This document shows, piece after piece, positions 2,180 to 62,122 of a stretch of DNA of 64,000 bases. The translations under genes and the position numbers were made by a program. A model generated the notes under the pieces. The model was not told the DNA's origin. It searched no databases and saw only the letters and a program-made list of their open reading frames with translations. Every line of letters starts with the position of its first letter. Positions within the stretch are counted from its first letter, which is position 1. Source of the DNA: Perkinsela sp. CCAP 1560/9 (Eukaryota; Protista; Euglenozoa: Kinetoplastea); contig CBFFSA010000012.1 in assembly GCA_965644495.1 (NCBI GenBank), positions 310,001 to 374,000 of the forward strand. Reading direction: 5' to 3'.

Positions 2180-3148
2180 TTTTAGGCTCTTCGTTAAACG
2201 AGGTGGTTGTTTTCAATTTAGAAGTTACTCATGCTGCGCGCTTAGCGTTGAAAACTACCACCGCGTTGAACGAAGAACCTAAAAAAGAAAAATGGCCAGG
2301 AAAGCCGAAGAAACTGGAAGGATTTGAGACAAAAATAGCCGATTTCTGGGGTAAAAATATGGGAATTTGTGTATTTTTGCTCTAAAATCGATATTTGCGT
2401 GCGGGAAATCACTCGTAGGCATGAATTCAAGGATACGATCAATAGCACGAAATTTTTTTGAAAAAATTATTTTTCGAAACAAACCCGCAGAAGCGGTAGC
2501 CGGGGTCTTGGCGCGCATTTTCCACTCCCCTACCCGGGGGTGACCCCCCCGCGTATCCGCAGGACGGGTCCGCCAAGTTCGGATTTTTTCGGAAAAAAAA
2601 ATTGAATAAAATTGCAACTTGGCGAAAAAAATAGCAAACAAATTATTATATATTTTTCCAAAATCGTTTCCCCTATTGTATTTTGAGAGTTTGTGACCTA
2701 TACTAGCTTTCTCCGCAGCTGTATTCGCAGGCTATCTCTTCTTCGAGCCGTGGTATGCCCGCGAAAATGGCCCATTTTTGACTAAAAAAGGTGAAAAAGT
2801 ATTTTTCGGACCCCAAGGGACCTTTTTGGGTCGAAAAAATGGTGTGGTTGGAGTCGTATTCTCTACCCAATACGTTTGGTAGGCTTTCATTCCTGCCTAC
2901 GAGTGATTTCCCGTACGCAAATGTCGGATTTAGTGCTCTGAGAGGTAAAATACGCAAAAATGGCCCCATTTTTACCCAAACATCGGCTATTATCATCAAC
3001 ATCGGCTATAATCATTCTGTTTTCTTCAGCTTTCCATACCAAATTTTCTTTTTTAGGCTCCTCGTTGGTGGTAGTTTTCAACGCGAAGCGCGCAGCATGA
3101 GTGACTTCTAAGTTGAAAACAACCACCGCGTTTAACGAAGAGCCTAAA
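2180..3148. mobile_element. Two head-to-head 5'-truncated copies of the palindrome-ended element (subfamily B)
   Basis: 99-bp palindrome at 2183-2281 followed by reversed body. Forward body from about 2444, ending in a palindrome at 3054-3146 that has a small deletion. Confidence 0.85.
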
Positions 3149-3154
3149 TTTGTA

Positions 3155-3209
3155 ATGCATATAGCACATTTATAATGCTATATGCACTATAAATGTGCTA
3201 TATGCATTA
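3155..3209. repeat. 21-bp-arm palindrome
   Basis: AATGCATATAGCACATTTATA ... TATAAATGTGCTATATGCATT. Confidence 0.75.
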
Positions 3210-4743
3210 GCAATGTGCAGCTTAATATGCATTATAATGTGCGGGTGCCAGGGCTTGATCATGACTGCAGAAGAAAACGGAATCGCCTACATCTGTTCAC
3301 CCTGTCCAAGTTTCAGTAGGCCTTTCCCGAAACCTTTCGTGGAGTCTTCTACAGTCCAGATTGTTGCCTCGCCACATTTTTTGCCACACCACCCGTCAGT
3401 AAAGTCCACTGTTCCACTAGGCAGCCGTATTCTGTTGCTTTTTTTGAAAAAATAAAAATAAAGTTTTTTAAAGTTTTATAGTAAAATAAAGTCAATAAAG
3501 TACTGTTTAGTAACTTTATTCGCAAACAAAAACTTTATTTTACTTTACTAAAGTTTCCGCGAATCCTGAAAAATAAACCATTTCGATAGGCGTACCACGG
3601 CTCCAAGAAGGGGTATCTTGCCAAAACAACCTCGTAGAAAGCCAGATAGCCTGCGAAAACAACTGCGGAGAAAGCTAGTATAGGTCCCAAACTATCAAAA
3701 TACAATAGGTGAAACGGTTTTGAAGAAATATTTTTGTTTACTTTATTGTTAAAGTGTGAGAAATTGGTCTCTTGAAAAATGTGAAGAAAGTGATAATCCA
3801 TCTATCGGATGCACGCATTTGAGAGCCTTGGTTCCATGCTATAACGCGCAAAGTCTTTGTGTTGGGAACAGCAAAATGCAACAAAAATGAGCTCAAACGG
3901 ACACTTGGCTGAAAAGTTAGAGGGGGGTGACTTTTTGCTGTGGGGGGGTTATTGCTGTGTTTCTCTTTATAATTTATTTTAACTGTTTCTATTCACTTTT
4001 TAATCGAGGGTAGAGCGATAGTTATACAACCACCGCAAATTTTGCAGCTATGTTCACAAGGTAATTAAGTGCCAAGCTTGCACGCCATCCATCAGTTCTG
4101 GCCACTGAGCGTCCCAGTGGCCAAATTTAGCACATGCCAGTCATTATAGACTCCGATCGATTTGTTGGGTTCTTTAAAAAGGTTTTCTATGCCTGATCGA
4201 TCACTTTTGTTATCTCCAAATGATACAACTCGCGCGAAGTATAGCTTGACTTGCCCCGCTCGGGTGCCAGTCACGCACACTTCCTGTAGGATGGAAGGTC
4301 GGACGTTCCCTTGCAGGAGAATTAAGTGTACCTGTATTTTTTGTCATTACTTAGCTTTCCATTCTTTTCTTGGTTCATTTTTTGTTTGTTTGTTTGTTTG
4401 GTACAGGAGCGCCTGCAATTCCCACGTGCAGACGCCACAAGTACCACTCCGGCTCCCGACTGATTCCATGTACGGGGACGCAAGGCTCTCCCAGGGCGCT
4501 TCACCAGTGACACTGTACACTATGTAGTGAGCCTACTACACCCCCGTTCAGAAAAAATATTACAAAAGTTTTGAGAGCATGGAAAGAGCTTTTTAGTAGT
4601 CTTTTTCGTAGTTACTCGGATACGTTAGGATAACAACGGAAAAATAGTCAGAATTCATCATTTTGCAGTACGACCAAAAAAAATATTATCTTAAATTTTT
4701 ATCTGAAAATTGTCTACTTTCTGGGATTTGTTCTTATTTTTCA

Positions 4744-6492: not shown

Positions 6493-6690
6493 TTCTTTGT
6501 TAGGCTCTTCGTTAAACGCGGTGGTTGTTTGCAACTTAGAAGTTACTCATGGTGCGCGCTTCGCGTTGAAAACTACCACCGCGTTTAACGAAGAGCCTAA
6601 GAAAGAAAATTTGGCCTGGAAAGCCAAAAATATCCTATCTTCAAAAAATGTGGTCATTTTTGGGTATTTTTGCTCTCAGAGCACTAAATG
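6493..6690 (-). mobile_element. 3' fragment of the palindrome-ended element
   Basis: Palindrome 6501-6599 plus about 90 bp of body. Confidence 0.85.
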
Positions 6691-12041: not shown

Positions 12042-13056
12042 GGACGGTAGGGACAAATATTTGACGAAAAATTGATTTTTTTCGTAAATGATTCAAAAGT
12101 CCTTTTAAATGTTTTTATGGCATTTGCAGGTTCATGCACCTATTTTAAGCGTTTAAAAGAGACATCACCGCCCGCCCAGCTACCGTCACCCATCCCAGCC
12201 AAGATCCCCCATCCAGCCACCCGCTCAGCCCCTCGAACTAAATCTCGCTTACTGGGGCCAAATCTCTCTTACGGGACTTACGGTAATAGTGGGCGGTCTA
12301 ACACTCCGAGAAATTCGACCAGTCAGATATCCACGAGGAAGAACAATGATCAGTGATCCACACAGCTGCTCCGAATCCACACAGACCCTCCGAATAGGTC
12401 TGAGGTCTGGGGGACCGACTCGGACCCCCCGCATGGAACCAACTCCCCTACCCGATGTGGTCGTTAAAAAACGTTAAACACGTCGGCAGAAACTGGTAGA
12501 GGCGTTCGGACCTCGCACCCCCAAACGTCTGTGAAGGGCCTATTGTGCCACCCTTGAAGGAGAGTGGCAACTTCCCAAAGGGGGAACATCCTGAGGGAGC
12601 CAGCGGCCAGCCGGGGCGACCCGATGCCCTTCATTCACTCAGAAACGCATTTGCCGTCCTGCGATAGTCAGCTGCGTTTGTCAGGTAAGAAAATGTTGAT
12701 TTCATGTGGATCAAATCGTCGAAACTTCCTTCAGATCGCCGGGAAGAAACAAAGTAACCGATCATTCCCAAGTAATCGTCAGGGGAGCTCAAGCGCCCAC
12801 AAGAACGTCTCGCCGCGCTGACTTATTGCACTCTCGACCAGAGTGTTGGATTTCTGGGTGATCTACCCATGGGAAAAGTTTCGATAGAGTGAATTACTAT
12901 GCCATGTTACTAAAGAAGTGTGGTGCAACAAGTTAATAAAATTATGCGCTCAGAGACGCTGAAAATGGCTGCATGAATACGAAAATGATTTGAAAACGTT
13001 TAAAAAATTATTTCGAAAAAAATCAGTTTTGCGTCAAATATTTGTCCCTACTGCCC
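12042..13056. mobile_element. Non-autonomous Mutator-like element
   Basis: TIRs GGACGGTAGGGACAAATATTTGACG / CGTCAAATATTTGTCCCTACTGCCC. Perfect 9-bp TSD CTAAAACTC at 12033-12041 and 13057-13065. Confidence 0.85.
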
Positions 13057-13146
13057 CTAAAACTCTAACTATTTATTGATAAAGCTCTTATCATGCTATT
13101 ATGACGGGAGTGCAAGTCACTGGTTTTCGTCTTTATCTCTTTACTT

Positions 13147-22926: not shown

Positions 22927-23439
22927 TCATTTGTGTCCAATTCTTCCTATTTTTAAACCCAAAAATTGATGCCCGAAATAAAAGCTAAGAGGGGTAATTT
23001 CTGCTCCACGAATATCATGTGTTCCTCTACTTCCAGCTCCCTTGAGCATCTTTTTTAATATGTCAGAAAGCAGCCACGAGCATTCGTGTCCTGCACGTCG
23101 TTTCACAAATATTAGTGCACTCCAAATACCTGCAGGTGAGCACATGCCTTGATTGTACCATTCCACAAGAAATGACATGAACTCTTCCTCTGAACACGTC
23201 TCGATTTTAATACTCTTGACTTTTCTCACCCTCTTTAGGAAGCTTTCAAGGGGATTCAAAACTCGCTCATAAGTCTTTAAGGTAGTAGGCTTCACAGATG
23301 CATTCACGAGAACCATGCGTGCTGTGCTGCACCTAATTAGCTTAGCGCGCGAAGGCTTAAACTTACGAGACATACGATATACACTAATGAAACGACTAAG
23401 AGGGGTGAACCGGGATCGGTGCGAGCGGGTGCGGCTCAA
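22927..23439 (-). pseudogene. N-terminal fragment of a tyrosine recombinase (VIPER/TATE-like)
   Basis: SVKPTTLKTYERV...FMSFL...SAL...KGA...RGA pattern; truncated before the catalytic domain. Confidence 0.65.
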
Positions 23440-24850: not shown

Positions 24851-25581
24851 TCCCCCTCGGCTTAATAAAAGCGCGCGTACCTCTTCGAACGACCTAGGCA
24901 TCACGTTAGTGAGGTAGCGACAAAAGGAAAGCAACATTTCAAAAACTCAAGAAACACTCAGACCATATGGACAGGTGTCGAAAAATTCTCCAAGTATTTT
25001 CGCCCGTTGAAACAGCTTCGCTTCAGCGGGTGCGGCCGGGTGCGCCAAGTAATCGTAATTTCGCCGGTCCACCCCTCTAATTACAATTTTAGTTAATAAA
25101 GCTGTATCCGTTTCTCCACTTCTTTTTTTTTTGCTGTCTAATATCTCAACTTGCTTTCCTTTCTCATCTTAGTTGTACTCGTCTTACTTGCACTTCTTTC
25201 CCGTGCTTCTCACGCCTACCTCTTCAATCTATGAAATTACCCGAGTCTGCTGATCAGTGAACTATTTTGTAGTCTTTTCTTGTAACGAAACCTATCTTGT
25301 GCTTTTCTTAAAAACAAAAAAAAATTACAAACTAATTGCCGCAGCAAAATTATAATATTAAACATGCCCACTCTCAGTCTTCCTTAAAATCCAAGCACTG
25401 AAGACGTTTTTCAGAACAACACTAGTCCTGACAACAAGAAGCCATAAGGCCTAGTAACTTAGCCCACCAAAAATAATAGTAACTATAAGAAATAATGATA
25501 CTAACACTTTATTCGCGATGTATGAAAAAAAGGAGATTTAGGTTTGTAATTCAAAAGGAATATACGGAAGTCTATCTTGAA

Positions 25582-26280
25582 TTGCGGTGGTTGTAAAATT
25601 ACCGCTCTACACTCGATTATTGAAAACAAAGTGAACAAAAACAGTGAAAATATAAAGAGGAACACAGTAATATAATAGAAGAAAAAATATAAAGGGGGGC
25701 CCCGGTGGTCCAAAACTGAAAAAAAGCATCAAAAAAATGGGGGGTCCACGGGGGGGGCATACGTCGCGAAATTTTTTTTCGAATTTTTTGCTTTGCAAAA
25801 TCGAGCGCAGGGAAGTGGTAGAGTAGGCCGCGGCGATAATTTTCCACCCCCCCTGCGGGTACCCCCCCTGGTACGCGCAGGAGGGGTCCGACAAGGTCAA
25901 AATTTCCGAAATTTTTAGGGTGACCAAAAAAAAAAATTTGACGCAAAAAAAAGGAAAAATATTATTTTTCCACAATCGACTCCTAAATCGTATTTTAAGA
26001 GTTTGGGACCTCAGCTACTAATCTACGGCGTTTTTTGCGACAGATTCGACTCCTGCCCCTACTGGGAAGGCATCCAAAACGGCCCAAATTCGGTGTAAAA
26101 TTTCGCAATTTTTGCCGAAAAATCGAGCTTTTACTCCCAAAAAAGTAGATTATTCATCATCTTTTTGCGATTTTCTTTTTTAGGCTCTTCGTTAAACGCG
26201 GTGGTAGTTTTCAACGCGAAGCGCGCAGCATGAGTGACTTCTAAGTTGAAAACAACCACCGCGTTTAACGAAGAGCCTAA
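25582..26280 (+). mobile_element. Full-length palindrome-ended element (subfamily A)
   Basis: Starts TTGCGGTGGTTGTAAAATTACCGC; ends in the 99-bp palindrome 26181-26279; flanked by A and T. Confidence 0.9.
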
Positions 26281-26300
26281 TAATGTCTTATCAGAAACAT

Positions 26301-27409
26301 TTATTGCTTTTTATCTGCAGATCGGTCTTTTGCGTCGATTGAGGGACAATCCGATTTGTGATGACCTGCACCGCCACAACCGTAACACAGAAACGGACGA
26401 CCACGTTCTTCAAAGCCGCGCGACCAAGTGCGCCGCGGAACATTGTCTGCAAAGCATTGAACTTCTTGTTTCTGCTGCTGTGGAAGCGTTGTCATGGGAC
26501 GGAGAGAATATGCTTCACTCACTGGTTCCCAACCCTTTATCATAAAGGAGCCCTTTATCGTACGTGCGCTTTCTTCAAAGCGCAACTTGAGGTCTAAGAG
26601 GTGATGTAGATGTTGTTGTTGCAGTCGACGAGCTTGTAGCTGCCACTTATACTCCAATTTTATGGATGTTGTTTGTTGCTTATGCCGAGCGATTGCTTCT
26701 TTAAGCGTCGAGTCGGCTGAACTTGTTTTCTGAGGAAGGATATTATTCTTGAGATCTCGTCAAATGTTTTTGGGGAATTACCCGTTGCGTTCGAGATTTC
26801 TTGCTTATCCCTCCCTGTAAGTATCTTGGAATAGGTTGGACGCATTCGGTCAACGGCCGCAAATTTCGTAAAAAGGCTGGAAGCATGGACCCGAAAGGGA
26901 CCAGTCCAAATACTAGGGGGCTTTGGACGAAGGGCAGCTCGTTTGCTAGTTGCACATTCTCCTTTTAGGAAGTCCTTGTGTGGGGTTGTATGCGGTGATT
27001 TCGCGTTTTTAGACCCTGTAACCGGGAAAGGGCTCCTTATGCTCGCAGGGCCCGCCTTATCTCGCTGGGCATCACGGTTACTGGATTTCCTTGACCAAGA
27101 CTTCTCCCTGGCTTCTTGATTGTTTCCTGATTTATCATGTAGTGGAAGCTTCTCGCTCGGCTTTGCACCCTTCTGGAGAACGCGGATACGATGCTCTCCT
27201 GGGCAATACCGCCCTGTCCTTTCGCTGTCTTTAAACGTAGAAACAAATGACGCCAATGGCTTGAAAAGTTCTGCGTTACTCATCCCTACATTCGAATCAC
27301 GGTTCATTACGGTATAGCACCGCTCGCACTGCTTGTGGAAGCTTTTACTAGGTCGAAAACGACGTCCGCAATCACGACAATTCCACTTGGGAATTCCCCA
27401 AGCGGACAT
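26301..27409 (-). pseudogene. Gag-like ORF with a CCHC zinc knuckle, one frameshift
   Basis: N-terminal CxxC...CxxC and C-terminal CYGCGGAGHHKSDC. The two ORFs join by a shift at about 26700-26760. Confidence 0.6.
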
Positions 27410-27419
27410 TTAATAGGAA

Positions 27420-27973
27420 TTTCAGTGGTTGTAAAACTGCCGCTCTACCCTCAATTATTAAAAAAAAAAGTGAACAAAAACAGTGAAAATATAAAGGGGA
27501 ACACAGTAATATAATAGAAGAAAAAAATATAAAAGGGGGCTCCGATGGTCCAAAATTGAAAAAATTGAAAAAAATGGGGGGTCCAGGGGGGGGGTCATGG
27601 TCGAGCAATTTTTTTCGAAAAAATTAGTTTTCGAAAAAAAAACCGCAGAAAGGGTAGCCGGGGTCTTGGCGCACATTTTCCACCCCCCTACCCGGGGGTG
27701 ACCCCCCGCGTATCCGCAGGACGGGTCCGCCAAGTTCGGATTTTTTCGGAAATGTCGGATTTAGTGCTCTGACAGCAAAAATACGCGAAAATCACCCCAT
27801 TTTTACCCGAAATTCGGCTATTTTTGGCTATAATCTTTCCGTTTTCCAGGCTAAATTTTCTTTTTTAGGCTCTTCGTTAAACGCGGCGGTAGTTTTCAAC
27901 GCGAAGCGCGCAGCATGAGTGACTTCTAAGTTGAAAACAACCACCGCGTTTAACAAAGAGCCTAAAAAAGAAA
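27420..27973 (+). mobile_element. Palindrome-ended element (subfamily B, internally deleted)
   Basis: Both ends present; palindrome 27866-27964. Confidence 0.88.
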
Positions 27974-28499
27974 TATAAAATTATGTAACACAACAAATAG
28001 TCAACAATTTATATACATTGTATATGTACATTGTATATAAATTATAGTGCTTAGAACGACTTTTAATGGAAATTTGGTCGAAGGGAACATTTGTTTTGAA
28101 AACGCGTATTTTTGGGTACAGTTTGAGTGCAGGTGACCCAAAGATTTTTTTTCTACATATTTTCTATTTCTTGTCAACGTTCAACGTCAAAATCAACGCG
28201 AAAATGAGAATAGAAATAAAACAAATCCTTTCAATGTTCAATTACGAGTTATGAGAATAGTGACGACCACTGTAAAGTGGAACACTGTACTCCGCCTTTC
28301 ATGTCCACCCACATGTCGTATACTCCCCCTTTCATAATTCTTTATAAGTGCGAGCCCAAGATGATTCATCGTTTTATATAAATTTATATAAAACTTGAAG
28401 GCGATTGCAAAACACTAAAAGAGCAGGATAAAAAACGGAGCCCGCGTATTTCTCATCCTTGATGGATCGATTCGCGTATCAAGAATATACATTTTAATA

Positions 28500-29190
28500 T
28501 CATGGTTGAGCAATTTTTTTTTTTTTAAAATTGGTTTTCGAAAAAAAACCGCAGAAAGGGTAGCCGGGGTCTTGGCGCGTATTTTCCACCCCCCTACCCG
28601 GGGGTGACCCCCCCGCATATCCGCAGGACGGGTCCGCCAAGTTTGGATTTTTTCGGAAAATTCTTTTTGCAAAAAAATTCAACTTGGCGAAAAAAATGGT
28701 AAAAAAAGCATATTTTCCCAAAATCGTTTCACCTATTGTATTTTGAGAGTTTGGGACCTATACTAGCTTTCTACGCCGTTGTTTCGCAAGATATCACTTC
28801 TTGGAGGCGTGGTACGCCTCCCAAAATGGCCCGTTTTTGACCACCAAATGCGAAAAAAGTAATTTTCGAACCCAAAGGGGTCTTTTCGTGTGGTAACAAT
28901 GGTGTGGTTGGATTCGCATTATCTACCCATTACGTTCCGTAGCCTTGAATGCATGCCTACGAGGGATTTCCCGCACACTAATGTCGAATTCAGTGCTCGA
29001 TACGATAATATGGCCCTATTTTTTCCTAAAAATTGGTTATTTTTGACTCAAATCCTTCCGGTTTCTTCGGCTTTCCTGGCCAATTTTTTTTAGGTTCTTC
29101 GTTCAACGCGTTGGTAGTTTTCAACGCGAAGCGCGCAGCATGAGTGAATCCTAAGTTGAAAACAACCACCGCGTTTAACGAAGAACCTAA
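28500..29190 (+). mobile_element. Palindrome-ended element (subfamily B, 5'-truncated)
   Basis: Palindrome 29091-29189 with TAGGTT/AACCTA changed in both arms. Confidence 0.88.
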
Positions 29191-29276
29191 TATAATTAAA
29201 CATTCAATAATATTAGTCGGCAGTATATCTTAACAATTTCAACAGTCACCTCACAGATTTCTATGAATTATTATTC

Positions 29277-29897
29277 ATGCTTCTGCTTCTTGCACTTCAC
29301 ACATCGGATACACAATCGACACATGCTGTACATCGAGGAAAGGTTACCGGAGCTTCACTACCAGTGGAATTTGATTTAATGCGACTCACACAGAATGTTG
29401 AGAATCCCGACACTACATGGAGTACGAATACAACAGCGTGCATGTGGCGGGGGATAGCGTGCAATACGGCTGATGAGGTGATCACTATTGACTGGATAAA
29501 CTTCAAGCTCCGCGGTGAGCTTCACCTGAAATATTTTCCCGTGACTTTGAAGAGGCTCTATATCCATCATAATATTTTTTCAGGAGATTTTTCCTTCGAA
29601 ATATCACCTCCAGTACTCGTATCTATGATAATAGCGGGTAACAATTTCAACGGCACTCCAAATTTTTGTAGCCTGCCTCCTATGCTAGAATATCTTTCGA
29701 TGAGTAATAATAAATTTGAAGGTCGCGTTGATTTTTCTTCCCTTCCTTTAACCTTGAATGAAATGTATCTGAACTCTAATCTGAAGTTGCAGGGAACTTT
29801 GGATGTTAGCGGAGTATTGAAGAATTTGTATTACAATGTTCAAGCGACACAAATTAAGGTCAGTAGTGGAAACCTTTATCGCTTTAAATGGTCGTAG
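29277..29897 (+). CDS. LRR family copy 5
   Basis: Close paralogue of 21945-22547. Confidence 0.9.
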   Translation: MLLLLALHTSDTQSTHAVHRGKVTGASLPVEFDLMRLTQNVENPDTTWSTNTTACMWRGIACNTADEVITIDWINFKLRGELHLKYFPVTLKRLYIHHNIFSGDFSFEISPPVLVSMIIAGNNFNGTPNFCSLPPMLEYLSMSNNKFEGRVDFSSLPLTLNEMYLNSNLKLQGTLDVSGVLKNLYYNVQATQIKVSSGNLYRFKWS

Positions 29898-30112
29898 TCG
29901 GGTTATATTGCACCCTCAGCCTAGTATTTCACTCCTTAGAGCTTTTGTGAACTTTTAACATAAAATCCGGATTCTTGTTAAATAAGAACAAAAGATGTTT
30001 GCTATCCTTCGTAAAATCTTTCCTAGTACGAAAGTTCTCTTTTCTTTAGAAAAGAACTTTTTTTTACTTAAAAGGAACTTTCCTAAAGGGGGGTCTCGTC
30101 TATTATTAACAA

Positions 30113-30670
30113 TTTTAGGCTCTTCGTTAAACGCGGTGGTCGTTTTCAACTTAGAAGTCACTCATGCTGCGCGCTTCGCGTTGAAAACTACCACCGCGTT
30201 TAACGAAGAACCTAAAAAATAAAAATCGCCAAAAGATCATCAACAATCTATTATTTCGAGTGAAAAAGCTCTTTTTTCGGCGAAGATTGCGAAATTTTAC
30301 ACCGAATTTGGGCCGCTTTGGATGCCTTACCAGTAGGGGTAGAATGCGAATCTGTCGAAAGAAACGTCGTAGAATGGTAGCTGAGGTCCCAAACTCTCAA
30401 AATACGTTTTAGGGGTTGATTTTGGAAAAATATTGTTTTTACTTTTTTGGGATCGAATTTTTTTTTTTGGTCATTCCAAAAATTTCGGAAAATTTGACCT
30501 TGTCGGACCCCCCTGCGCGTACCAGGGGGGGTCACCCCCAAATATGGGGGTGGAAAATCATCGCCTCGGCCTACTCTACCACTTCCCTGCGCTCGATTTC
30601 GAAAATCAGGATTCTGAAAATTTCAAAAAACGACGTACATATACCCCCCCTGGACCCCCCTTTTTTTTGA
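30113..30670 (-). mobile_element. Palindrome-ended element (subfamily A, 5'-truncated)
   Basis: Palindrome 30116-30214 followed by reversed body. Confidence 0.88.
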
Positions 30671-31002
30671 ATACTTTTTTATTAGAACGATTATCTATTT
30701 GAAGCGCTTATTTGTGAAATTGTGATGGCAAGTATCTAAGATAACAACTTTTACTCCCCTCCAAGTTCACCAGTTTCACATCCATAAGTAATTATAATTA
30801 TAAATTCAAAAAAATTATAATTTATACTTATAATTACTTATGGAGGGGGGAGTAGGTACGCCGGCCCCTCACGCACGACCTACCCAGACCAAGCAAAATC
30901 TTCATCACAGGTTTAGTGTTTCCACGCGACGCTAAGATAAGCTCCGACTCGAACGAACTTACAAAGCGCCCGCACCGCCCCTCTCTATAATTCTCTATAA
31001 TT

Positions 31003-31602
31003 TCAATAAGGTATCTTCTCACCTTTATACTCAATAACCATTCTCAGTCGCTTTTGAAATGACGCGTGGAGTTTGGCGCACTTCGTCCGACGCGAAGTAA
31101 GCATTACATGATTCAATAATTTCTTACCTAGTTCGTGGCCGCTTCTTATTTTTGAAGCGCTTTACTACGTCCCAAAGATTCTCTATCGGGTTGAGATCAG
31201 GGGAGTCCGCTGGCCAACGAAGAAAAGGTCCATCTTCCTCTGCTTGCAGTAAGCGTAGCACGGTAAGATCCCCGCGAGCTTCCCACCACTGCATCGTATC
31301 CTTCGCTCGATGCCCAGGGGCTCCATCATCCACAGGAACAGAATTACGGTCTTGGGCCCATGGCGAATAGGTTTTGTCTAATATTTCCTTGCGGTAATAC
31401 AAACTTCCCAAGCCCTTGTTCGGTGGAATGGCTTCTGTTCCTCCTGATGCAATGTAGGAACAATAAAATTCTTCGAACGCGCACCAATGGTACGTGTAAT
31501 TTCCGAATCTATCAAAAGCTCCCCACACCATAACTTGCGTTGGGTGATGAGTGCGATCCATAAAGACGGGAGCGTCAGGGTGCTGCCATGCCTCTTGGTC
31601 TT
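31003..31602 (-). pseudogene. Tc1/mariner (IS630-Tc1) transposase, C-terminal part
   Basis: VMVWGAF, DDGAPGH and WPADSPDLNPIENLW; after a stop and frameshift, KRLRMVIEYKGEKIPY*. Confidence 0.9.
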
Positions 31603-33746
31603 TTTAGGACTCCCGCGCTTCACAGTTTTTTTCTCACTCGTTTCACTAGCGTTTGAAAAAATTTACTGTTTTTGAATTTTTCCGAGGACTTCCAACAAAT
31701 GCTTTTCATGTAGTGCCTTGGAAGCGCACTCTGCTTCTATGAGCCTATTTCGCTCTTCTAATTTCTTTTTAGTGTTGGCTGAAATGACGTTCTCTTCTCG
31801 CAAAGTTGCTAGGTTCTCTAGCGCAATAGCAAAATTTTTGCAGTTTTTTTCTATCTTCGTTTCAAGACGTTTGATTTTGCTTGACAAACGTCGAATTTTT
31901 TTCACATCTGCATATTTTCTTTGCGTGTTATGTTGCGGAGCCTTGTGAACGTCAAGCGACCCTCTTGCCACTGAAGCAGGGATTGGATCGATACTGTCCC
32001 CCCCCACGCGGGTTCCGATTGAAGTTGTGATAATCGGTTTATCGTAGTCGGACAGCTCACCGACAGCAATCAGACCGGTGATTTCCTTTTCTACGCGGGT
32101 TGCAACTGATGTTGTAATTCTCGGGGTGTCGTACAGCCCGCAGTCAGAAACCTCATTCTGTGTGACCTGTGGGGCATCATACCCGTCTGCATCAAGACAC
32201 ATGAGTTTTCCATTCAGAAGGCGGATTAGACCATCTTCTGGATGATATTATTATTATTGGTCAAATGGCGTACGAAATAAAGTCTTATAAAAAAAATGCG
32301 AAAATCTTGAAAAATACGAAATGTGAGCATAGAAAAATGGATAAAAATCACGCAAATATATTCTAGCTGAGTTAATATGGAGATAATGAACGAAAACGCA
32401 CCTTTCTAAGGTGCACAACGGACGTACATGTCGTATCGCGAAGGAATTAGTTAAAAAGCTCCCACGAGCCGCTCAATCAATTGCGGGCAGTGAATGTGAA
32501 CGGGGTGTATATTCGTTTATGGAAATGTTTTATGATTGTTGTTTGGATAGTAGTATCTCGTATGATGTCATGGAAGAAGAAAAAGCATTTTAGTCTAATT
32601 TATGTTAAGATGTTAAGACATCTCAAACGGGGGGTTCAAATGAGGTGCATCATTCAATCGAAATGCAACGTACTAACTCTATACAAAATACAGTTCTGGA
32701 CAATGTACCGTTACAATCTTTTTGTTTCATGCACAGTGATAATCATACATCTTTTTAGAAGTTTTTGCTAAATATCAACAAACTACATAGTTTATGACAC
32801 CGGTTGCGAGGGGTTTCACGGGGAGTGTCTTTATGTCGTATCGGTCCTTCTTTTGCCTGCCTTAATCATGTCCGAAACTGCTGCTCCACACTCTCAAAAG
32901 GAGCATGTAGTAATCGACGTAGCAATCAGTATTCGGTGTAGTAATCAGTAACCAAAATGTTGCGGTGGTTGTATAACTACCGCTCTACCCTCGATTATTG
33001 CAAAAAAAGTGAACAAAAACAGTGAAAATATAGAGGAACACAGTAATATAATAGAAGAAAATAATATAAAAGGGGGCTCCGGTGGTCCAAAATTGAAAAA
33101 AATGGGGGGTCTAGGGGGGGTTCATGGGGGGGGTCTAGTTTTGACATAGGGGAGCTCGCTTCGTATTTCAGAAGATCCTACTGGTGGTCGGTTTTCTTCG
33201 TCCTCTTGGATAAAAGTCAGAAAGCGCGAAGTTGACATGTTCATTTTGCTCGCGAAAAGTGGAAGTTGCGTTCGGAAGAACTTATCATGGTCCTCGGAAG
33301 CCATTACCTGATTTACAGGTTTCCCTCCTTTGGGATGCAGAACATTGGGCGATGGAGGGGGGGGTCTATGAGTACTCACCGAACGTGGAGCCCCTTCGGT
33401 AAATAATTCATTGAACCGACAGTCGACCATAAAAAAATCCTTTTTGCGCCTTTCAAGCCGCGACAGTTGCGTCCTAGTTTACCTGTATGAAGGCAACGCC
33501 CTACTGTGAGCGTTTTTAAGTGTGCGCCGCTGAATTTAATCTCGAAGGCATTGGCGATCGATTCCTTACATGAATAATTTATACCAAACACATCGTAAAA
33601 AGCTAACACATCTTCTTCCGGCTAACCCGATAGCCGAAATGCAGTACATCACGCGATAGTATTGTTATCTTTAATAAATCTTTATATAAATTATACAAAT
33701 TATTTCAACAATTCAGGTTGTTCGCTTCACATTTTCTAAACGTTAC

Positions 33747-35785: not shown

Positions 35786-36973
35786 ACCCTGGATGTGGTA
35801 ATGTGGTAATTTACAACATGTGTGGTAATAGGTGGTAATTACCACATTTTAATTACCCGATTATCACATTCGAAAGCTACTCGAGATTTGACGCGCATTC
35901 GTCGACGTAACAGCTGCAGGAAGCACAGATGGAGTAACCTTTGCCCATGTTCCAATTATTTTACGCATATCTTTGAAAGCAAGCTCCCGTTCGGTTTGAA
36001 CTAGCACAACTTTTTTATAACTATACTGCATGCTTCAATATAATGAATTCTTGAAAAATACAAACATAATACAGGGGGGAAATTAAGTTGTGTCAGCAAA
36101 AGTCGTGTTAATTTCTGGGATTAACACGACTTTTGTTGACACAACTTTTGTCCCCTCCATCAGTGCCAGAGTGTCATGTAATACCCCTGAAACCGCACTC
36201 TCGATGGTCAAGTGACCTTCGCTCCAAAGGAAAGGAGTGAGTATGCACCCATTTTACCAAAAATAAAGAACCATTCTATTTTTTAACATATTTTTTTTCC
36301 TCACCAGGTTTTCGCATTAACACGACTTTTGTTGACACAACTTTTGTTGCCTAGACTTTGGTTGACATAACTTTTCCCCCCAGTGACTCGACATGTACAA
36401 CCTACTCGCAGAACATCATTGATACGAGCTCAGAAACCTGAAGGGACCACTTAGAACCCGTGGTGTTACAATGAAGATACATGTATAGAAGACAAGCGCT
36501 TTTTTTCAAATGATACATTTCGCCCCTCTAAAGTGGGAGAACTGCTACCCTAGTCGCCCAGTCCAAACGGGATATCCAACCTGAAGTTTCGCGAGTATTT
36601 CGGGATCAGGGACTATTTTTCCTATGCGCCCAACTGAGGAGTCTCACGTAGTTCACGAATCAACTCGCGAGGTTTTTATTCGCCAGAGATTCAATCCAAA
36701 CCTCCCATGCAAGAGGAACATGCGGAAATTTTCGCCGGGTCAGCTATCTGCAATTCCTGCATCGACGCCTAATGGTCATCTTCCCCCAGATCTTGCTTTG
36801 TAAGTCTCCACCTGTAAGTAAAATCATGGTCTGCAGCTTAGGATACAAAAAAGCTCCGAATCAGAATTTCATTTTTCGCTCAAATTAGTACATATAGATA
36901 ATGAGGTAATGAAAAAGTGTTAATTACCACTTTAGCACATATTCTGTAATTACCACATTAGCACATCCAGGGT
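35786..36973. mobile_element. TIR element containing a nested palindromic MITE (about 36070-36384)
   Basis: ACCCTGGATGTGGTAATGTGGTAATT / AATTACCACATTAGCACATCCAGGGT; inner 28-bp-arm palindrome 36086-36148; no TSD found. Confidence 0.65.
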
Positions 36974-44300: not shown

Positions 44301-45124
44301 AGCATGGGTACTTGGTTTGATCGATTTGGCGGTGAACCCACCTCCAAGATGGACAGCCAATGGGACTACGTTGATTTTCTTCATCTACAATAGATCCTAA
44401 CATTATTCGAAACTCCACCTTATCAATTGCATTTTTACCTATATATTTTATACCTACGTCCTAACCCTCCTGTCTCCCGGTGGCGTTTAACCCATCCAGA
44501 GACAGTAGATTCACTGCATTTCATAAGAGCAGAAGTGTCTGTAATTTAACGTCCCTGGTTTTGGACGTCATTGACGCAAATTACACGTGTTTCATAAGTG
44601 ATTTGTTGCACCGAGAGGGTGCATAGTTTGATGCAATAAAATCCGAAAAAAGGATAAAAATCTAACTTTAGAAGAATAAAAATCTGAAGAGAGTGCTATT
44701 ATAAACCGTTTCTGTAATTCCATGTTCTGACTTTTTTTGTGACAGACCCCCTCCCTAGTTATCTGTCGCACACTGATCCGCCTAGTTATCTGTCGCACCC
44801 CTACACCCCCCCCTAGTTATCTGTCACCTTTTCGCGAAAAGTAGTGACAGATAAGTAGGGGGGGGTACAGTACTATCCTAGTACGGATAGTACGGTAGTT
44901 AGTGCGTACTAGTACGAAAATAAAGGTCCGTACTAGATTTAGTACATCGTACCGTAGGCTCGGAAAGTGAAATTTCGAGAAAGTGTGTTAATAGGCGTAC
45001 ATTTCACGTAGTATCACGTTTGGGTTGCATATTTCGATTTTTTGACCTAAACTATGAAATATTGATATGCAGACTCAGCAAGGGTTGGGAGTGCCTTGGT
45101 CATGGGCGGAAAGAATAATGATTA

Positions 45125-47362: not shown

Positions 47363-48182
47363 TTGCGGTGGATGTATAACTACCGCTCTACCCTCGATTA
47401 TTGAAAAAAAAGTGAACAAAAACAATGAAAATATAAAGAGGAACACAGTGATATAATAGAAGAAAAAAATATAAAAGGGGGCTCTGGCGGTCCAAAACTG
47501 AAAAAAAAAATTGAAAAAAATGGGGGGTCCAGCGGGGAATCCAGGGGGGGGCATACAGTGCGCCCAGATAGTAAAGTTTTTTTTTGGTAGTTACCACCGA
47601 CTTTGGGTAACTACTAAAAAAACCTTTACTATTTGGGAAAACCGTTTTTTGGGACATTACTAACTGGGCGCACTGTACGCCGTTTTTTGAAATTTTCAAA
47701 ATCTTGATTTTCGAAATCGAGCGCATGGAAGTGGTAGAGTAGGCTGCAGCGATGACTTTCCATCCCCCCACCTGGGGGTACCCCCCCTGGTACGCGCAGG
47801 AGGGGTCCAACAAGGACAAAAATTCCGAATTTTTTGGTATGACCAAAAAATAAATTTGACCCAAGAAAAAGGAAAAATATCATTTTTCCAAAATCGGCTT
47901 CTAAAACGTAATTGGAGAGTTTGGGACCTCAGCTACCGTTCCACGACGTTTGTTTCGACAGATTCGCCTCCTGCCCCTGCTGGTAAGGCATCCAAAACGT
48001 CCCAAATTCGGGTTTGGATGAATCGAACTTTTTCACGCAACAAAACTAGATTATTCATGACCTTTTGGCGATTTTGCTTTTTTAGGCTCCTCGTTAAACG
48101 CGGAGGTAGTTTTCAATGCGAAGCGCGCAGCATGAGTGACTTCTAAGTTGAAAACAACCACCGCGTTTAACGAAGAGCCTAA
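47363..48182 (+). mobile_element. Full-length palindrome-ended element (subfamily A) with a nested 120-bp MITE
   Basis: Palindrome 48083-48181; nested TA-CAGTGCGCCCAG...CTGGGCGCACTG-TA at 47556-47675. Confidence 0.9.
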
Positions 48183-50534: not shown

Positions 50535-50913
50535 AAGATTTCCACATCGATATATGAGTTTCTATTATTGCGGAGCCTGGAATTGAAAAAAAGAGTGAAT
50601 ACGTCCAGATTGCGGTGGTTGTATAACTACCGCTCTACCCTCGATTATTGAAAAAAAGTCAACAAAAACAGTGAAAATATAAAGAGGAACACAGTAATAT
50701 AAATTTAACAGAGCAAATAATTATTTTTAGTGGCTTCGTTAAACGCGGTGGTTGTTTTGAACTTAGAAGTCACTCATGCTGCGCGCTTCACGCTGAAAAC
50801 TACCTCCGGGGGGTTTCCTACCCCTAGGGGTGGTCTGGACCCCCCATTTTTTTCAATTGTTTTTCAGTTTTGGGCCATATTCTTTTTATTATATTACTGT
50901 ATTCCTCTTTATA

Positions 50914-51649
50914 TTGAGGGAGATACTACTCCCTCGCTACCGTAGGTTAATTCGTCGTGCCCGATTTGTGGCCCGATTTCGTGCCCGATATCGTTTCAGG
51001 TGAGTTTTCGAAAAAAATGTTTACAAAGACGTATGAATCGAACTTAGTGACAAGACCACTAGTTTTTCAACAATTCCGATGGGTTCCCCCTGCCCCCTCC
51101 CCTCCCCACCAGGGTGATCATAGCAATTTCTGAAATTTTGAAAAAAAAACTGAAAATTTATGGGTGAAAGTGAAAAATTATATTTTTCCCGAATCAACTC
51201 CTAGACTGCTTTTTGAGCGTTTGGAGCCTTCTATACCTGTATACGCTTTGGTTTCATTCGATATTTCTCCACCCTGTGCCGGTAATTCACCTATAAAGGC
51301 CAAAATTTACCTGGAAGTGTGTGACACGCAAGGCCGTAGAGGAAGGAGGAGGCGCAAGGCAGAAGGCGTAGCCTTCTGTCTTTTTGCCGCGGCGACGACG
51401 ACTTCCTCGCGTGGGAAGCTGTAAGATTTCCTAGTGGGCATCTTTCGATGGCTATGTAACCCAGGCTAAAGTGGACGAGGGAGATACTAAAGGCACCTTT
51501 GGCAAACTACCACAAAACTGGAACGGTATCTCCCGGTTTGTAGAGCACTCTGATGTGACAAAAGGGTCTTTAACGGGAGATACCGTTCCAGTTTTGTGGT
51601 AGTTTGCCAAAGGTGCCTTTAATATCTCCCTCGTCCACTTTAGCCTGGG
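50914..51649 (+). mobile_element. Divergent palindrome-ended element (family C), nested in a reversed, deleted family A/B copy (50728-50913 plus 51650-51715)
   Basis: 5' hairpin GAGGGAG-ATACTA-CTCCCTC; 78-bp-arm palindrome 51458-51651; host sequence rejoins exactly when it is removed. Confidence 0.85.
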
Positions 51650-51928
51650 TTTTCAATGTTTTTGTTCACTTTTTCAATTATCGAGGGTAGAGCGGTAGTT
51701 ATACAACCACCACAATGTACGTTAAAGTGAAACTTTTCAGTAATTTTTAATTTTAATCCTTGATATGAGTGATGTTTCTAGGATTATTTGCCGTTTGTTT
51801 GCCCATCACCCCTCCTGGGTCATGGGTGGGCATGGTCAAAGTTGGCAAAATTCAAAAAAAAAATTGAACGGGGGTAGAAAATGGAAAAAAAAAGTTTATG
51901 AATTCCTATGTAAATTAATTTACATTTA

Positions 51929-52644: not shown

Positions 52645-54033
52645 TGTCACCCCCCCTTTATACTTCCGCCGGTTTCGGTGCCTTTGGAAGTATAAAGGGG
52701 GGGTCTGACTTTCGGAAGTATAAAGTCGGGTGGTATACCCAAAGTCGGTGGTAACTACCAAAAAAAACTTTACTATCTGGGCGCACTGTATGCCCCCCCC
52801 TGGATTCCCCGCTGGACCCCCCATTTTTTTCAATTTTTTTTTTCAGTTTTGGACCGCCAGAGCCCCCTTTTATATTTTTTTCTTCTATTATATCACTGTG
52901 TTCCTCTTTATATTTTCATTGTTTTTGTTCACTTTTTTTTCAATAATCGAGGGTAGAGCGGTAGTTATACATCCACCGCAATTAAAGGAACGCTAATTAA
53001 GGGAATAATTATTTTTCGTCATTTTTTGGCATTTTCAGGCAATTTATAATTACTAAGTAATGTCACCCTCCCTTTATACTTCCGACGGTTTCGGTACTTT
53101 TGGAAGTATAAAGGGGGGGTCTGATTTTTTGAAAAATCCGAGAAGCAAATGTTTTGGAAAAGGGGCAAAAAAAAATGCGCCGCTTCGCGGCGCTGGTTTC
53201 CTATTATTCTAGCTAAAAATCAATCATCTAATCTCCAAACAAGCAGGGCATAATGTTTGCTTCCGTGTTCCTCTTGCACACAATCAACATACGCTGTATA
53301 TTACGCTGTAGTGAATATGTGTCGGGACGATCTACCATTAGAAGCTTCATGGGACAGTCTTTGAAACGAGGTACATTCGCCTTTGCTGCAGCAGGAGCAT
53401 GTCCGCGCTGGCTGTCATCCCGCCCAGTTCGCTAAGGAGGAGTTCGTCAATTTTTTCGCATCTCGACATGTTTGTCCTTGTGCAAACCCCATCGCGCTTG
53501 CGACTATGATAGATTTACTTTTTTCTGGAAAAATCCGATACCATTTTTCCGGATGGAGCGGATGGTTCGAGATCAGACGCCGTACTTCTCGCTGATTTGT
53601 GGAGCACTGCTACTTTCATTTATTCTCGAATGACACGCATTCAACTTCTCCTACATTGTTGGGTTCTTTCCTTCCTGGGGTGAACCGACGGACACTTGTA
53701 ATGTGCAGGCTCCGCGCAGGCTCCGCGCTTGAAACCATTATTTCGTTGGGAGGCCGAACGCGATGAAGAGGGGAATAAAGCTTAACCCACTGTGAGTATT
53801 GACATGGGAAAAAATACGGCAAATAATTTAAATGTATATCTAGCAATATCTCTACACACATCTCTAACGTTTAATAAAAAAAATGTAGAAAATTGTTGAT
53901 TTATGTAGAAAATTTGTTGCTTCGCGGCGCATTTTTTTTGGGACCGGAAGTATAAAGCGGGGGTGCTGATTTTTCATCTGGATGAAAACGGAAAAAAAAA
54001 ATTGACCCCCCTGAAGTATAAAGGGGGGGTGAC
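52645..54033. mobile_element. Composite TIR element containing an inverted duplicate of about 46905-47609
   Basis: TGTCACCCCCCTTTATACTTC-type ends at 52645, 53061 and, inverted, 54033. Confidence 0.7.
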
Positions 54034-54553: not shown

Positions 54554-55341
54554 TTTTTTAGTGGCTTCGTTAAACGCGGTGGTTGTTTTCAACTTAGAAG
54601 TCGCTCATGCAGCGCTCTTCGCGTTGAAAACTACCTTCGCGTTTAACGAATCCACTAAAAAAGAAAAATTCCCAAAACATTGTGAATAAACAATTTTTTC
54701 GGGCAAAACGGCCCGATTTTTCGGCGAAAATGGCGAAATTTTAACCGAAATTTAGGCCGTTTTTGATGCCTGACCATTAGTGGTAGGAGGCGAATCTGTT
54801 GAAAAAAACGTCGTAGAATGGTAGCTGAGGTCCAAAACTCTTAAAATACGTTTTAGGAGTCCATTTCGGAAAAATAATATTTTTCCTTTTTTTTGGGTCA
54901 AAATCTTATTTTTGGGTCATCCCAAATATTTCGGAAATTTTGACCTTGTCGGACCCCTCCTGCGCGTACCAGGGGCGGTCACCCCCAAGTGGGGGGGGGG
55001 ACTTCTTTAGGGGGACTTCTTTAGGGGGACTTCTTTTAACTCTACCACTTCCCTGCGCTCGATTTTAAAAAGCAAAAAAATCGAGAAAAAATTGTGACGT
55101 ACGCCCCCTGGACCTCCACCTGGACCACCCCCTGGATATGCCCCCCATGGACCCCCCCATGGACCCCCCATGTTTTTGAATTTGTTTTTTTCAGTTTTGG
55201 ACCACCGGAGCCCCCTTTTATATTTTTTTCTTCTATTATATTACTGTGTTTCTCTTTATAAAATTTCTCTTTATTTTCACTGTTTTTGTTCATTTTTTTT
55301 CAATAATCGAGGGTAGAGCGGTAGTTATACAACGACCGCAA
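54554..55341 (-). mobile_element. Full-length palindrome-ended element (subfamily A variant)
   Basis: Palindrome 54559-54657 with TAGTGG/CCACTA arms; 5' hairpin at 55318-55339. Confidence 0.88.
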
Positions 55342-60145: not shown

Positions 60146-62122
60146 GGGCAGTAGGGAAAAATTGCGCTGGTTGTATAACTACCGCTCTACCCTCGATTAT
60201 TGAAAAAAATTGAACAAAAACAGTGAAAATATAAAGAGGAATACAGTAATATAATAGAAGAAAAATTTATAAAAGGGGCTCCGGTGGTTCAAAAATTTTC
60301 AAAAAAAATCGGACCCTTGAGGGGTCCAGGGGAGGGGGGCGTACCGCACGAATTTTTTTTGAAAAAATTACTTTTCGATATAAAAGCGCAGAAAGGGTAG
60401 CCGGGGTCTTGGCGCGCATTTTCCATTCCCCTACCCGGGGGTAGAAAGAGTTTTCGGATTTTTTTTTGGAAAAAATTTCAACTTGACGAAAATAATGGTA
60501 AAAAAAATATTTTTCCAAAAATATTTTTTCGCCTATTGTATTTTGATAGTTTGGGACCTATATTAGCTTTCTACGCCATTGTTTTCGCGACATGTCGCTT
60601 CTTAAAGCCGTGATACGCCTTCCAAAATGACCCACTTTTTACCAAAAAATGCGAAAATGTAATTTTCGGACCCAAAGGTGTCTTTTTGTGTCACAAGAAT
60701 GGTGTGGTTGGAGTCGCATTCTCTACCCAATACGTTTGGTAGCCTCGAATACATGCGTACGAGTGATTTCCCACACGCAAAAGTCGAAATTAGTGCTCTG
60801 AGAGCAAAAATACCCAAATATCACCCCATTTTTACCTAAAAATCGGCTATTTTTCGCTCAAATCCTTCCGTTTTCTTCAGCTTCCCTGGCCAATTTTTCT
60901 TTTTTAGGCTCTTCGTTAAACGCGGTGGTAGTTTTCAACGCGAAGCGCGCAGCATGAATGACTTCTAAGTTGAAAACAACCACCGCGTTTAACGAAGAGC
61001 CTAAAAAAGAAAAATATTTGACGAAAATTTGATTTTTTTCGAAATTGCTCACAATAATTTTTTAAACGTTTTCAAATCATTTTCGTATTCATGCAGCCAT
61101 TTTCAGCGTCTCTGAGCGCATAATTTTATTAACTTGTTGCACCATACTTCTTTAGTAACATGGCATAGTAATTCACTCTATCGAAACTTTTCCCTTGGGT
61201 AGATCACCCAGAAATCCAACACTCTGGTCGAGAGTGCAATAAGTCAGCGCGGCGAGACGTTCTTGTGGGCGCTTGAGCTCCCCTGACGATTACTTGGGAA
61301 TGATCGGTTACTTTGTTTCTTCCCGGCGATCTTAAGGAACATCCCTCTTATAATCTCTCTCTTTCGGGTGCTCGAGAGCAGTTTCGACGCTTTGATCCAC
61401 ATGAAATCAACATTTTCTTACCTGACAAACGCAGATGACTATCGCAGGACGGCAAATGCATTTCTGAGTGAATGAAGGGCACCGGGTCGCCCCGGCTGGC
61501 CGCTGGCTCCCTCAGGATGTTCCCCCTTTGGGAAGTTGCCACCCTCCTTCAAGAGTGACACAATAGGCCCTTCACAGACGTTTGGGGGTGCGAGGTCCGA
61601 ACGCCTCTACCAGTTTCTGCCGACGTGTTTAACGTTGTTTAACGACCACATCGGGTACGGGAGTTGGTTCCGTGCGGGGGGGGGCCGAGTCGGTCCCCCA
61701 GACCTCAGACCTATTCGGAGGGTCTGGGTCCCTAATGTGAGGCCGCCAGGGAAACTGGCATACCCCGGGCTTGGGCGTTTCTTGGATAGCAGCAGCTGTG
61801 TGGATCACTAATCATTGTTCTTCCTTGTGGATAGCTGACTGGTCGAATTTCTCGGAGTGTTACCGTAGACCGCCCACTATTACCGTAGGTCCCGTAAGAG
61901 AGATTTGACCCCAGTAAGCGAGATTTGGTTCGAGGGGCTGAGCGGGTGGCTGGATTGGGGATCGTGGCTGGGATGGGTGACGGTAGCTGGGCGGGCGGTG
62001 ATGTCTCTTTTAAACGCTTGAAATGGGTGTATGAACCTGCAAATGCCATAAAAACATTTAAAAGGACTTGAATCACTTTCGAAAAAAATCAATTTTTCGC
62101 CAAATATTTGTCCCTACCGTCC
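60146..62122. mobile_element. Second, inverted copy of the Mutator-like element; its TIR is interrupted by 60162-61014
   Basis: 61015-62122 matches 12042-13040 in reverse; candidate TSD TACTGGGGG. Confidence 0.8.
60162..61014 (+). mobile_element. Full-length palindrome-ended element (subfamily B)
   Basis: Palindrome 60905-61003 extended by AAAAAGAAAAA; inserted at A|T within a known TIR. Confidence 0.9.

What the first reader, a model, noticed from the sequence alone, without database searches (positions are those of the whole stretch)
25582..26280. Abundant TSD-less elements inserted at A|T, with a 5' mini-hairpin and a long 3' palindrome
Seen: about 15 whole or partial copies (2183, 3054, 3960, 6501, 25582, 27420, 28500, 30116, 32960, 47363, 50610, 50728, 52738, 54559, 60162) in two subfamilies that share ends. 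The left end is TT+GCGGTGGTT-GTAT-AACTACCGC. The right end is a 99-bp palindrome (35-bp arms) that contains the same GCGGTGGT motif, so the element has asymmetric inverted repeats. The copy at 60162-61014 sits in a TIR whose empty form is visible at 12047-12066 (GTAGGGACAAA|TATTTGACG), which shows an A|T target and no duplication. Known: absence of a TSD, A|T or T-rich targets, asymmetric TIRs and a 5' hairpin characterise Helitron/Helitron2 (Helentron) rolling-circle elements, but their 3' hairpins are short. Inference: a non-autonomous family with an ssDNA intermediate and an unusual terminus. No mobilising gene is visible in this window.
Basis: partly seen in the sequence, partly recalled or inferred. 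Interest (0 to 1): 0.85.

Follow-up and report, generated by a model that had tools for sequence, protein, structure and literature searches.

The report
Helitron2 offspring with giant end hairpin
These repeats are short, non-coding passengers of a rolling-circle jumping gene (Helitron2 type). They are copied hundreds of times in a relative of trypanosomes, a group reported to lack such elements, and they end in an unusually large DNA hairpin whose last bases differ from copy to copy.

Summary
The 0.55-0.95 kb element has a fixed left end (TT plus a 9-bp hairpin) and an 11-bp asymmetric inverted repeat. Its right end is a palindrome with 36-46-bp arms and a 29-nt loop. There are 529 left ends genome-wide. 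Four empty-site comparisons show no target duplication.

The mobiliser is outside the window. The genome encodes RepHel proteins (DUF6570 + HUH Rep + Pif1; the model matches Helraiser, Z 16.9), and several copies end in the same right end, with left ends upstream by coordinates. So this is a non-autonomous Helitron2/HLE2 family.

Three points differ from described elements:
- The host is a kinetoplastid (Prokinetoplastina), where Helitrons were reported absent.
- The 3' hairpin is giant and runs to the terminus.
- The right end is ragged (45 of 48 stop 36-46 nt into the arm), and some outer-stem variants are mirrored in both arms.

A second, unrelated family with the same plan is nested at 50914-51649. 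An apparent 3-bp overlap (TTA|TTA) in five copies is unresolved. The scan has noted this family elsewhere in this genome. Verdict: new variant of a known kind.

The parts
25582..26280 (+). Full non-autonomous copy, subfamily A (the finding)
   Evidence: about 20 near-full-length relatives at 83-90% among the best-scored hits
25582..25605 (+). Left end: TT + 9-bp hairpin (GCGGTGGTT/AATTACCGC); 5' asymmetric repeat at 25584-25594
   Evidence: fold z -2.6; 47 of 48 left ends start TT, 44 of 48 preceded by A
26180..26280 (+). Right-end palindrome: 5' arm 26180-26215, 29-nt loop 26216-26244, 3' arm 26245-26280; 3' asymmetric repeat at 26252-26262, 18 nt from the end
60162..61014 (+). Full copy, subfamily B, 46-bp arms (60894-61014), inserted in the TIR of a 1-kb foldback element; empty sites at 12047, 13057, 59895, 62117
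   Evidence: last 550 bp are 87% like the 3' end of a RepHel copy
27420..27973 (+). Full copy with internal deletion, 44-bp 3' arm
47363..48182 (+). Full copy; empty paralog in L005, no duplication
54554..55341 (-). Full copy, GCCAC subfamily (change mirrored in both arms); empty paralog in L015
50724..51715 (-). Copy that keeps both ends (5' arm partly deleted), with a family-2 element nested inside
50914..51649 (+). Family 2: unrelated sequence, same plan (TT + 7-bp hairpin; 194-bp right palindrome at 51458-51651), inserted at A|T without duplication
   Evidence: fold z -24
2180..4038 (-). Left end (4038) and right end (2180) of a probably single interrupted copy
   Evidence: the joining is inferred
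2445..3148 (+). 5'-truncated copy
6493..6687 (-). Right-end fragment
28516..29190 (+). 5'-truncated copy
30113..30680 (-). 5'-truncated copy, subfamily A
32960..33102 (+). Left-end fragment
50610..50702 (+). Left-end fragment abutting the right end of the minus-strand copy
52738..52981 (-). Left-end fragment, part of an inverted duplication of 46909-47609

Best explanation
A non-autonomous Helitron2 (HLE2) family, moved in trans by the genome's RepHel lineage F1. Shown: shared ends with RepHel-coding copies, a fixed left end, a ragged right end, no duplication at four empty sites, and head-to-tail arrays. Inferred from Helraiser biochemistry: RepHel binds the left-end repeat, nicks just before the TT and stays bound through a tyrosine; the Pif1 domain peels off one strand; in that strand the right palindrome snaps into a 36-46-bp stem that stops the enzyme; the strand is released in the A-rich foot of the stem and is joined either to the left end (a circle, giving arrays) or to a T in AT-rich target DNA. 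The ragged end is best read as imprecise cutting or trimming where the A:T foot frays, bounded by the GC clamp. Occasional copying of the outer arm from its partner arm is possible but weakly supported.
For: 19 Helitron Rep hits and Rep-Pif1 pairs. HUH motif and YxxKY tyrosines; two copies 99.7-99.8% alike with open frames of 2975 and 2257 aa. The model's best PDB match is Helraiser 7LCC, Z 16.9, next 6.5. Nine RepHel 3' regions at 95-100% identity run into the palindrome's 5' arm. Three continue to a full right end followed at once by a left end (C2:43533, C51:41348, C2:836861). Left ends lie upstream of RepHel at C4:1129394, C2:942787 and C2:26535. DUF6570 is present and is reported as HLE2-specific (PMC11417382). 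End geometry fits the Helitron2 definition (PMC3627910). Empty sites. Arrays joined right end to left end. Of 48 right ends, 45 stop 36-46 nt into the arm and 47 are followed by T.
Against: The 3' hairpin is not of the described kind. No labelled HLE1/HLE2 references were available for a tree. Five copies show TTA|TTA flanks (Fisher p 0.011, post hoc). There is no evidence of expression or of circles.
Confidence: 0.9

Rival explanations
1. Same family and enzyme, but the right end is a free, self-primed hairpin during transposition. The outer 3' arm is re-synthesised from the copy's own 5' arm (a fold-back, parvovirus-like step) and re-cut at the first A|T. This would explain both the size of the palindrome and the ragged end.
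For: The longest ends stop exactly where the mirrored 5' arm reaches its first T, including in copies with private arm lengths. Six distinct variants are mirrored in both arms in the outer stem, against none of 21 in the inner stem (Fisher p 0.026).
Against: 20 outer-stem variants are not mirrored, including one (21G) shared by two copies, so re-synthesis is not obligatory. The test is post hoc and hand-listed. Inner-stem asymmetry may be selected, and ordinary arm-to-arm conversion after insertion gives the same pattern. The loop always keeps one orientation (no flip/flop).
Confidence: 0.22
2. A cut-and-paste MITE or foldback element (Tc1/mariner with TA, or PIF/Harbinger with TTA duplications).
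For: Long inverted repeat; DDE transposase remnants in the window; apparent 2-4-bp overlaps in 9 of 24 full copies.
Against: The inverted repeats are not terminal on both sides. 15 of 24 copies have no overlap at all, and four empty sites show none, one of them at an apparent 4-bp overlap. The ends are shared with RepHel genes.
Confidence: 0.03
3. A tyrosine-recombinase (VIPER/TATE/Crypton-like) derivative or a SINE-like retroposon with an A-rich tail.
For: No TSD and tandem copies fit a recombinase circle; such elements exist in the window; the variable end is A-rich.
Against: The A-rich tail is the mirror of the 5' arm, not poly(A). No RT or recombinase lies between the ends in the DNA held, whereas RepHel does. 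No Rfam match.
Confidence: 0.03

Closest known systems
Helitron2 / HLE2 (Bao & Jurka 2013, PMC3627910; Li et al. 2024, PMC11417382)
   Same: 5' T start; 11-bp asymmetric inverted repeat 2 nt from the 5' end, folded into a 5' hairpin; 3' repeat 18-28 nt from the end; no TSD; RepHel with DUF6570.
   Different: The 3' repeat lies inside a 101-121-bp palindrome that reaches the terminus, rather than upstream of a separate short hairpin. The right end is ragged in A's. RepHel is only 24-33% like its nearest relatives from other samples (one 375-aa fragment 41-44%). The host is a kinetoplastid.
FoHeli1/FoHeli2 of Fusarium oxysporum (PMC5148889)
   Same: Hairpins at both ends; the 3' inverted repeat is itself part of a hairpin; self-insertions; joined ends. 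Their TNAT|T target resembles the alternative boundary here (WAT|W).
   Different: FoHeli hairpins are short and 38-51 bp from a fixed ATATTTT end; here the stem is 36-46 bp and the end varies.
DINE-1 / HINE (non-autonomous Helentrons; PMC4067079)
   Same: Non-coding, high-copy, subterminal repeats, 5' repeat in a hairpin, no TSD, variable terminal homopolymer.
   Different: Their 3' palindrome is 5-10 bp, the variable bases are T's, the target is TT, and the partner has a C-terminal endonuclease. F1 stops soon after the helicase.
Helraiser / HLE1 (PMC4778049, PMC5876387; PDB 7LCC)
   Same: Fold of the Rep region (Z 16.9, 317 residues, 18% identity); A|T junction; essential left end; hairpin as terminator; circles.
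   Different: HLE1 has TC...CTRR ends, a 16-20-nt hairpin, no asymmetric repeats, no DUF6570, and L in motif 2; none of these applies here.

Membership tests
Helitron superfamily | Autonomous partner encoding HUH Rep fused to a Pif1 helicase | tested here: met
   PF14214 + PF05970 in one open frame; motifs; fold match to 7LCC
Helitron superfamily | Non-autonomous copies share both ends with the autonomous element | tested here: met
   Right end shown in DNA (L011) and by coordinates; left end by coordinates only
Helitron superfamily | No target-site duplication | tested here: met
   Four of four empty-site comparisons; five TTA|TTA copies without an empty site remain open
Helitron2/HLE2 | 8-15-bp asymmetric inverted repeats, the 5' one 0-2 nt and the 3' one about 20-30 nt from the ends | tested here: met
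   11 bp; 2 nt; 18-28 nt
Helitron2/HLE2 | 5' hairpin using the 5' repeat; 5' T | tested here: met
Helitron2/HLE2 | A 3' hairpin, described as short and downstream of the 3' repeat | tested here: inconclusive
   A 3' hairpin is present but it is 36-46 bp and contains the repeat; FoHeli1/2 are a precedent for the repeat lying in the hairpin, not for the size
Helitron2/HLE2 | DUF6570 domain in RepHel | tested here: met
   E 1e-11 in F1, 1e-19 in F3; 17 of 20 nearest long relatives
Helitron2/HLE2 | Insertion between T and T/C | tested here: inconclusive
   Junction reads A|T or, shifted by one base, AT|W; sequence cannot separate the two
Helitron2/HLE2 | Falls in the HLE2 clade of a RepHel tree with labelled references | not testable with these tools
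   No Repbase-labelled proteins on hand; the tree (quick method) had unnamed relatives only
Helentron (strict sense) | AP endonuclease domain after the helicase | tested here: not met
   F1 frame stops about 45 aa after the last helicase motif; no such Pfam hit
Helitron1/HLE1 | 5'-TC and CTRR-3' ends; L after RG in Rep motif 2 | tested here: not met
   Ends are TT and A-rich; motif 2 has A, N or S in F1-F3, and L in none of 86 relatives
DDE MITE (Tc1/mariner, PIF/Harbinger) | Terminal inverted repeats at both ends and a constant TSD | tested here: not met

The most novel reading that the evidence does not exclude
These kinetoplastid Helitron2 lineages use a giant terminal hairpin as a self-primer: the released 3' end is trimmed and re-extended on the element's own 5' arm before joining. 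This would be a fold-back step not described for Helitrons, shared by at least two sequence-unrelated families in this genome.
Probability: 0.22. Interest if true: 0.8.

Novelty: new variant of a known kind. Interest (0 to 1): 0.55.

Why it matters
First, published surveys state that Helitron transposases are absent from kinetoplastids (PMC8788227) and reject reported cases in trypanosomatids as false positives (PMC12278014). Here a basal kinetoplastid carries at least three RepHel lineages, two near-identical copies with long open frames and over 500 passengers (roughly up to 2% of the genome). That changes the inferred ancestral mobilome of the group or points to horizontal entry.

Second, how HLE2 elements stop copying has never been tested biochemically. 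A young, apparently intact enzyme with a ragged, hairpin-bounded end gives a natural read-out and a testable substrate.

Third, annotation tools that expect short hairpins and TT targets would call these repeats foldback MITEs.

Tried and rejected
- Reads laid on 25300-31100 (5,801 letters; contigs only) showed no joint that cleanly skips a copy among the rows shown, and the one RNA-guess run laid nothing, so they say nothing on polymorphism or expression.
- The left-end motif is absent from the metagenome and viral collections.
- Loci of other organisms (L058-L062) have no matching ends, and the two RepHel loci searched have no giant palindrome, but the contigs may not reach the termini.
- Sequence search of the PDB missed Helraiser; the fold search found it.
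- No Rfam family matched.
- No paper held both 'Helentron' and 'long palindrome'; the library is incomplete.
- Flip/flop of the loop was looked for and not seen.
- A link of family 2 to RepHel F2 was not established: the copy beside F2 faces the other way and looks inserted.
- MITE, retroposon and recombinase readings were rejected as set out under rivals.

Full report
OBSERVATION. The left end is TT followed by a 9-bp hairpin; 9 matches in the window against 0.00 expected, and 529 in the 21-Mb genome against 0 for the control. Of 48 distinct left ends held, 47 start with TT and 44 follow an A. In the 25582 copy the right end is a palindrome at 26180-26280 (36-bp arms, 29-nt loop); in the 60162 copy the arms are 46 bp. 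As single-stranded DNA they fold at -45 and -55 kcal/mol, z -10.7 and -14.3. An 11-bp repeat 2 nt inside the left end pairs with a site 18-28 nt inside the right end. Copies are 0.55-0.95 kb; the best full-length hits are 75-90% alike.

TARGET SITE. Joining the flanks of full copies gave four clean empty paralogs: for the 60162, 47363 and 55341 copies and for L009. None shows a duplication, including L009, where the flanks seem to overlap by 4 bp. Among 24 full copies, 15 have no overlap (18.6 expected after shuffling). One wrinkle remains: all five copies whose left flank ends in TTA have a right flank starting TTA, against 6 of the other 19 (p 0.011, post hoc), and none of the five has an empty site in the DNA held. 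A TTA|TTA preference, a 3-nt read-through (the C8 array has right end + TTA + left end junctions) or a minority short duplication could each explain it. The junction can be drawn as A|T or, one base over, as AT|W.

RAGGED RIGHT END. Among 48 distinct right ends, 45 stop 36-46 nt into the 3' arm, with peaks at 45 and 36; 47 are followed by T. The lower limit is 2 nt past the last GC-rich pairs. The upper limit is where the mirrored 5' arm first reaches a T. The loop never flips. Variants in the inner stem are never mirrored (0 of 21), while 6 of 26 in the outer stem occur in both arms (Fisher p 0.026, hand-listed, post hoc). Head-to-tail arrays are joined right end to left end, and left ends repeated at 38-bp spacing fit self-insertion at an internal A|TT followed by re-mobilisation (inference).

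THE MOBILISER. The genome has 19 matches to the Helitron Rep profile and paired Pif1 domains. Lineage F1 has two copies 99.7-99.8% alike in the parts held, with open frames of 2975 aa (C8) and 2257 aa (C4). It carries DUF6570, the HUH motif (ECQKRGALHFH), a YxxKY tyrosine pair and Pif1. An AlphaFold model of the Rep region (pLDDT 84) matches the Helraiser transposase 7LCC best (Foldseek E 6e-5; Z 16.9 over 317 residues, next 6.5). The 800 bp downstream of one F1 gene, ending in the start of the palindrome's 5' arm, recur at 95-100% identity at nine places beside F1 helicase domains. At C2:43533, C51:41348 and C2:836861 this runs on through about 550 bp (87% like window 60460-61013) to a complete right end, followed at once by a left end. 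Left ends lie upstream of F1 genes at C4:1129394, C2:942787 and C2:26535. Two further broken lineages, F2 and F3, are 24-28% like F1 and 50% like each other; a quick tree sets them apart from F1. Relatives elsewhere are unnamed metagenome or assembly proteins at 24-33% (one fragment 41-44%); 17 of 20 have DUF6570.

HOST. The genome encodes a JBP1 DNA-binding domain (E 1e-55) and a RET2 middle domain, on contig C1, which also carries RepHel genes and many left ends. A window gene and a host Pif1 have as nearest named relatives Papus ankaliazontas (PhM-4) and the PhF-6 transcriptome, at 50-54% for Pif1 against 45% or less for all others. PhF-6 is Apiculatamorpha spiralis and both are Prokinetoplastina (own knowledge). 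So the host is a basal kinetoplastid; a Perkinsela-like endosymbiont is my guess and was not shown. [quoted passage not shown] PMC12278014 found no DNA transposons in 57 trypanosomatids and calls reported helitrons false positives. PMC8101967 reports only Merlin. Helitron-like ORFs are mentioned for the sister group Diplonema (PMC10161547).

A SECOND FAMILY. Window 50914-51649 is a different repeat, with dozens of matches genome-wide. It has the same plan in unrelated sequence: TT plus a 7-bp hairpin, a 194-bp right palindrome holding the inverted repeat (fold z -24), and insertion at A|T in a copy of the first family without duplication. The giant hairpin is therefore an architectural trait, not an accident of one family. 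Which RepHel moves it is unknown.

MECHANISM. Shown: shared ends with RepHel copies, a fixed left end, a ragged right end, no TSD at tested sites, and arrays. Taken from Helraiser work (PMC4778049, PMC5876387): the left end is essential, one strand is used, the 3' hairpin acts as terminator and can be bypassed, and circles form. Inferred here: nick before TT, strand displacement, folding of the long stem, release in its fraying A-rich foot, then joining to the left end or to a target T (about 0.9 for the family assignment; lower for the detail of the last step). The fold-back alternative, in which the paired 3' end primes copying of the 5' arm and is re-cut at the first A|T, explains the upper limit and the mirrored variants. 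But most outer variants are not mirrored, and post-insertion conversion would look the same (about 0.2).

COMPARISON. It works like a Helitron2/HLE2 element and meets the tested defining features (PMC3627910, PMC11417382) except for the form of the 3' hairpin and an undecidable target base. FoHeli1/2 (PMC5148889) are a precedent for a 3' repeat inside a hairpin, though not for its size. It is not a strict Helentron (no endonuclease after the helicase) and not HLE1. I did not compare it with the Paramecium clade (PMC13085455).

VERDICT. A real, abundant, non-autonomous Helitron2 family with an unusual terminus in an unexpected host: a new variant of a known kind, interest 0.55. Earlier notes of this scan describe the same family on other pieces of this genome. 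I reached the reading before consulting them and do not count them as support.

Noticed in passing
window 50914-51649: Second family with the same end plan (TT + short hairpin; 194-bp right palindrome) but unrelated sequence, nested in the first; many copies genome-wide; partner enzyme unknown.
   Followed up: partly
window 12042-13057 and about 60140-62122; TIR also at 59895: About 1-kb foldback/MITE-like element with ~105-bp imperfect TIRs, 87% alike between the two copies; host of the 60162 insertion.
   Followed up: partly
window 46909-47609 and 52736-53436: Inverted duplication, 98% alike (415 bp at 100%), enclosing about 5 kb with two LRR genes; it copies a left end together with its upstream flank.
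   Followed up: no
window 7548-8725 (-) and 22927-23439 (-): Reverse-transcriptase pieces and a weak integrase SAM-like hit, probably VIPER/TATE-type tyrosine-recombinase retroelement remnants.
   Followed up: no
window 31124-31561 (-) and 45942-46976 (-): Tc1/mariner-like transposase pieces (DDE_3; HTH domains); a 101-bp inverted pair at 45651-45751/46764-46864. DNA transposons other than Merlin are not reported for kinetoplastids in the papers read.
   Followed up: no
window, about 12 ORFs (e.g. 1115, 21945, 29277, 42577, 48274, 49884, 62398): Expanded family of short intronless leucine-rich-repeat genes, often next to element copies.
   Followed up: no
L035-L037, L054-L056: Two more RepHel lineages (F2, F3), broken, only 24-28% like F1; they branch apart from F1, which suggests separate origins or an old split.
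   Followed up: partly
run X3, joint 26281 to 25581: A high-depth contig joins a right end to a left end through a 32-nt spacer not seen in the window: an array or circle junction with captured flank.
   Followed up: no
L006, L010, L012, L013, L017 flanks: TTA on both sides of the copy in all five cases where the left flank ends in TTA; no empty site available; unexplained.
   Followed up: partly
right-end stem, positions 9, 7 and 13 of the arms: An A/A mismatch in the inner stem is kept in nearly all copies, and subfamily variants there are never mirrored; the 5' arm resembles the reverse complement of the left-end hairpin, as if built from it.
   Followed up: partly
window 36085-36147, 44805-44866, 59441-59531, 59701-59898, 5929-6006: Other short local palindromes, possibly tiny foldback elements.
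   Followed up: no
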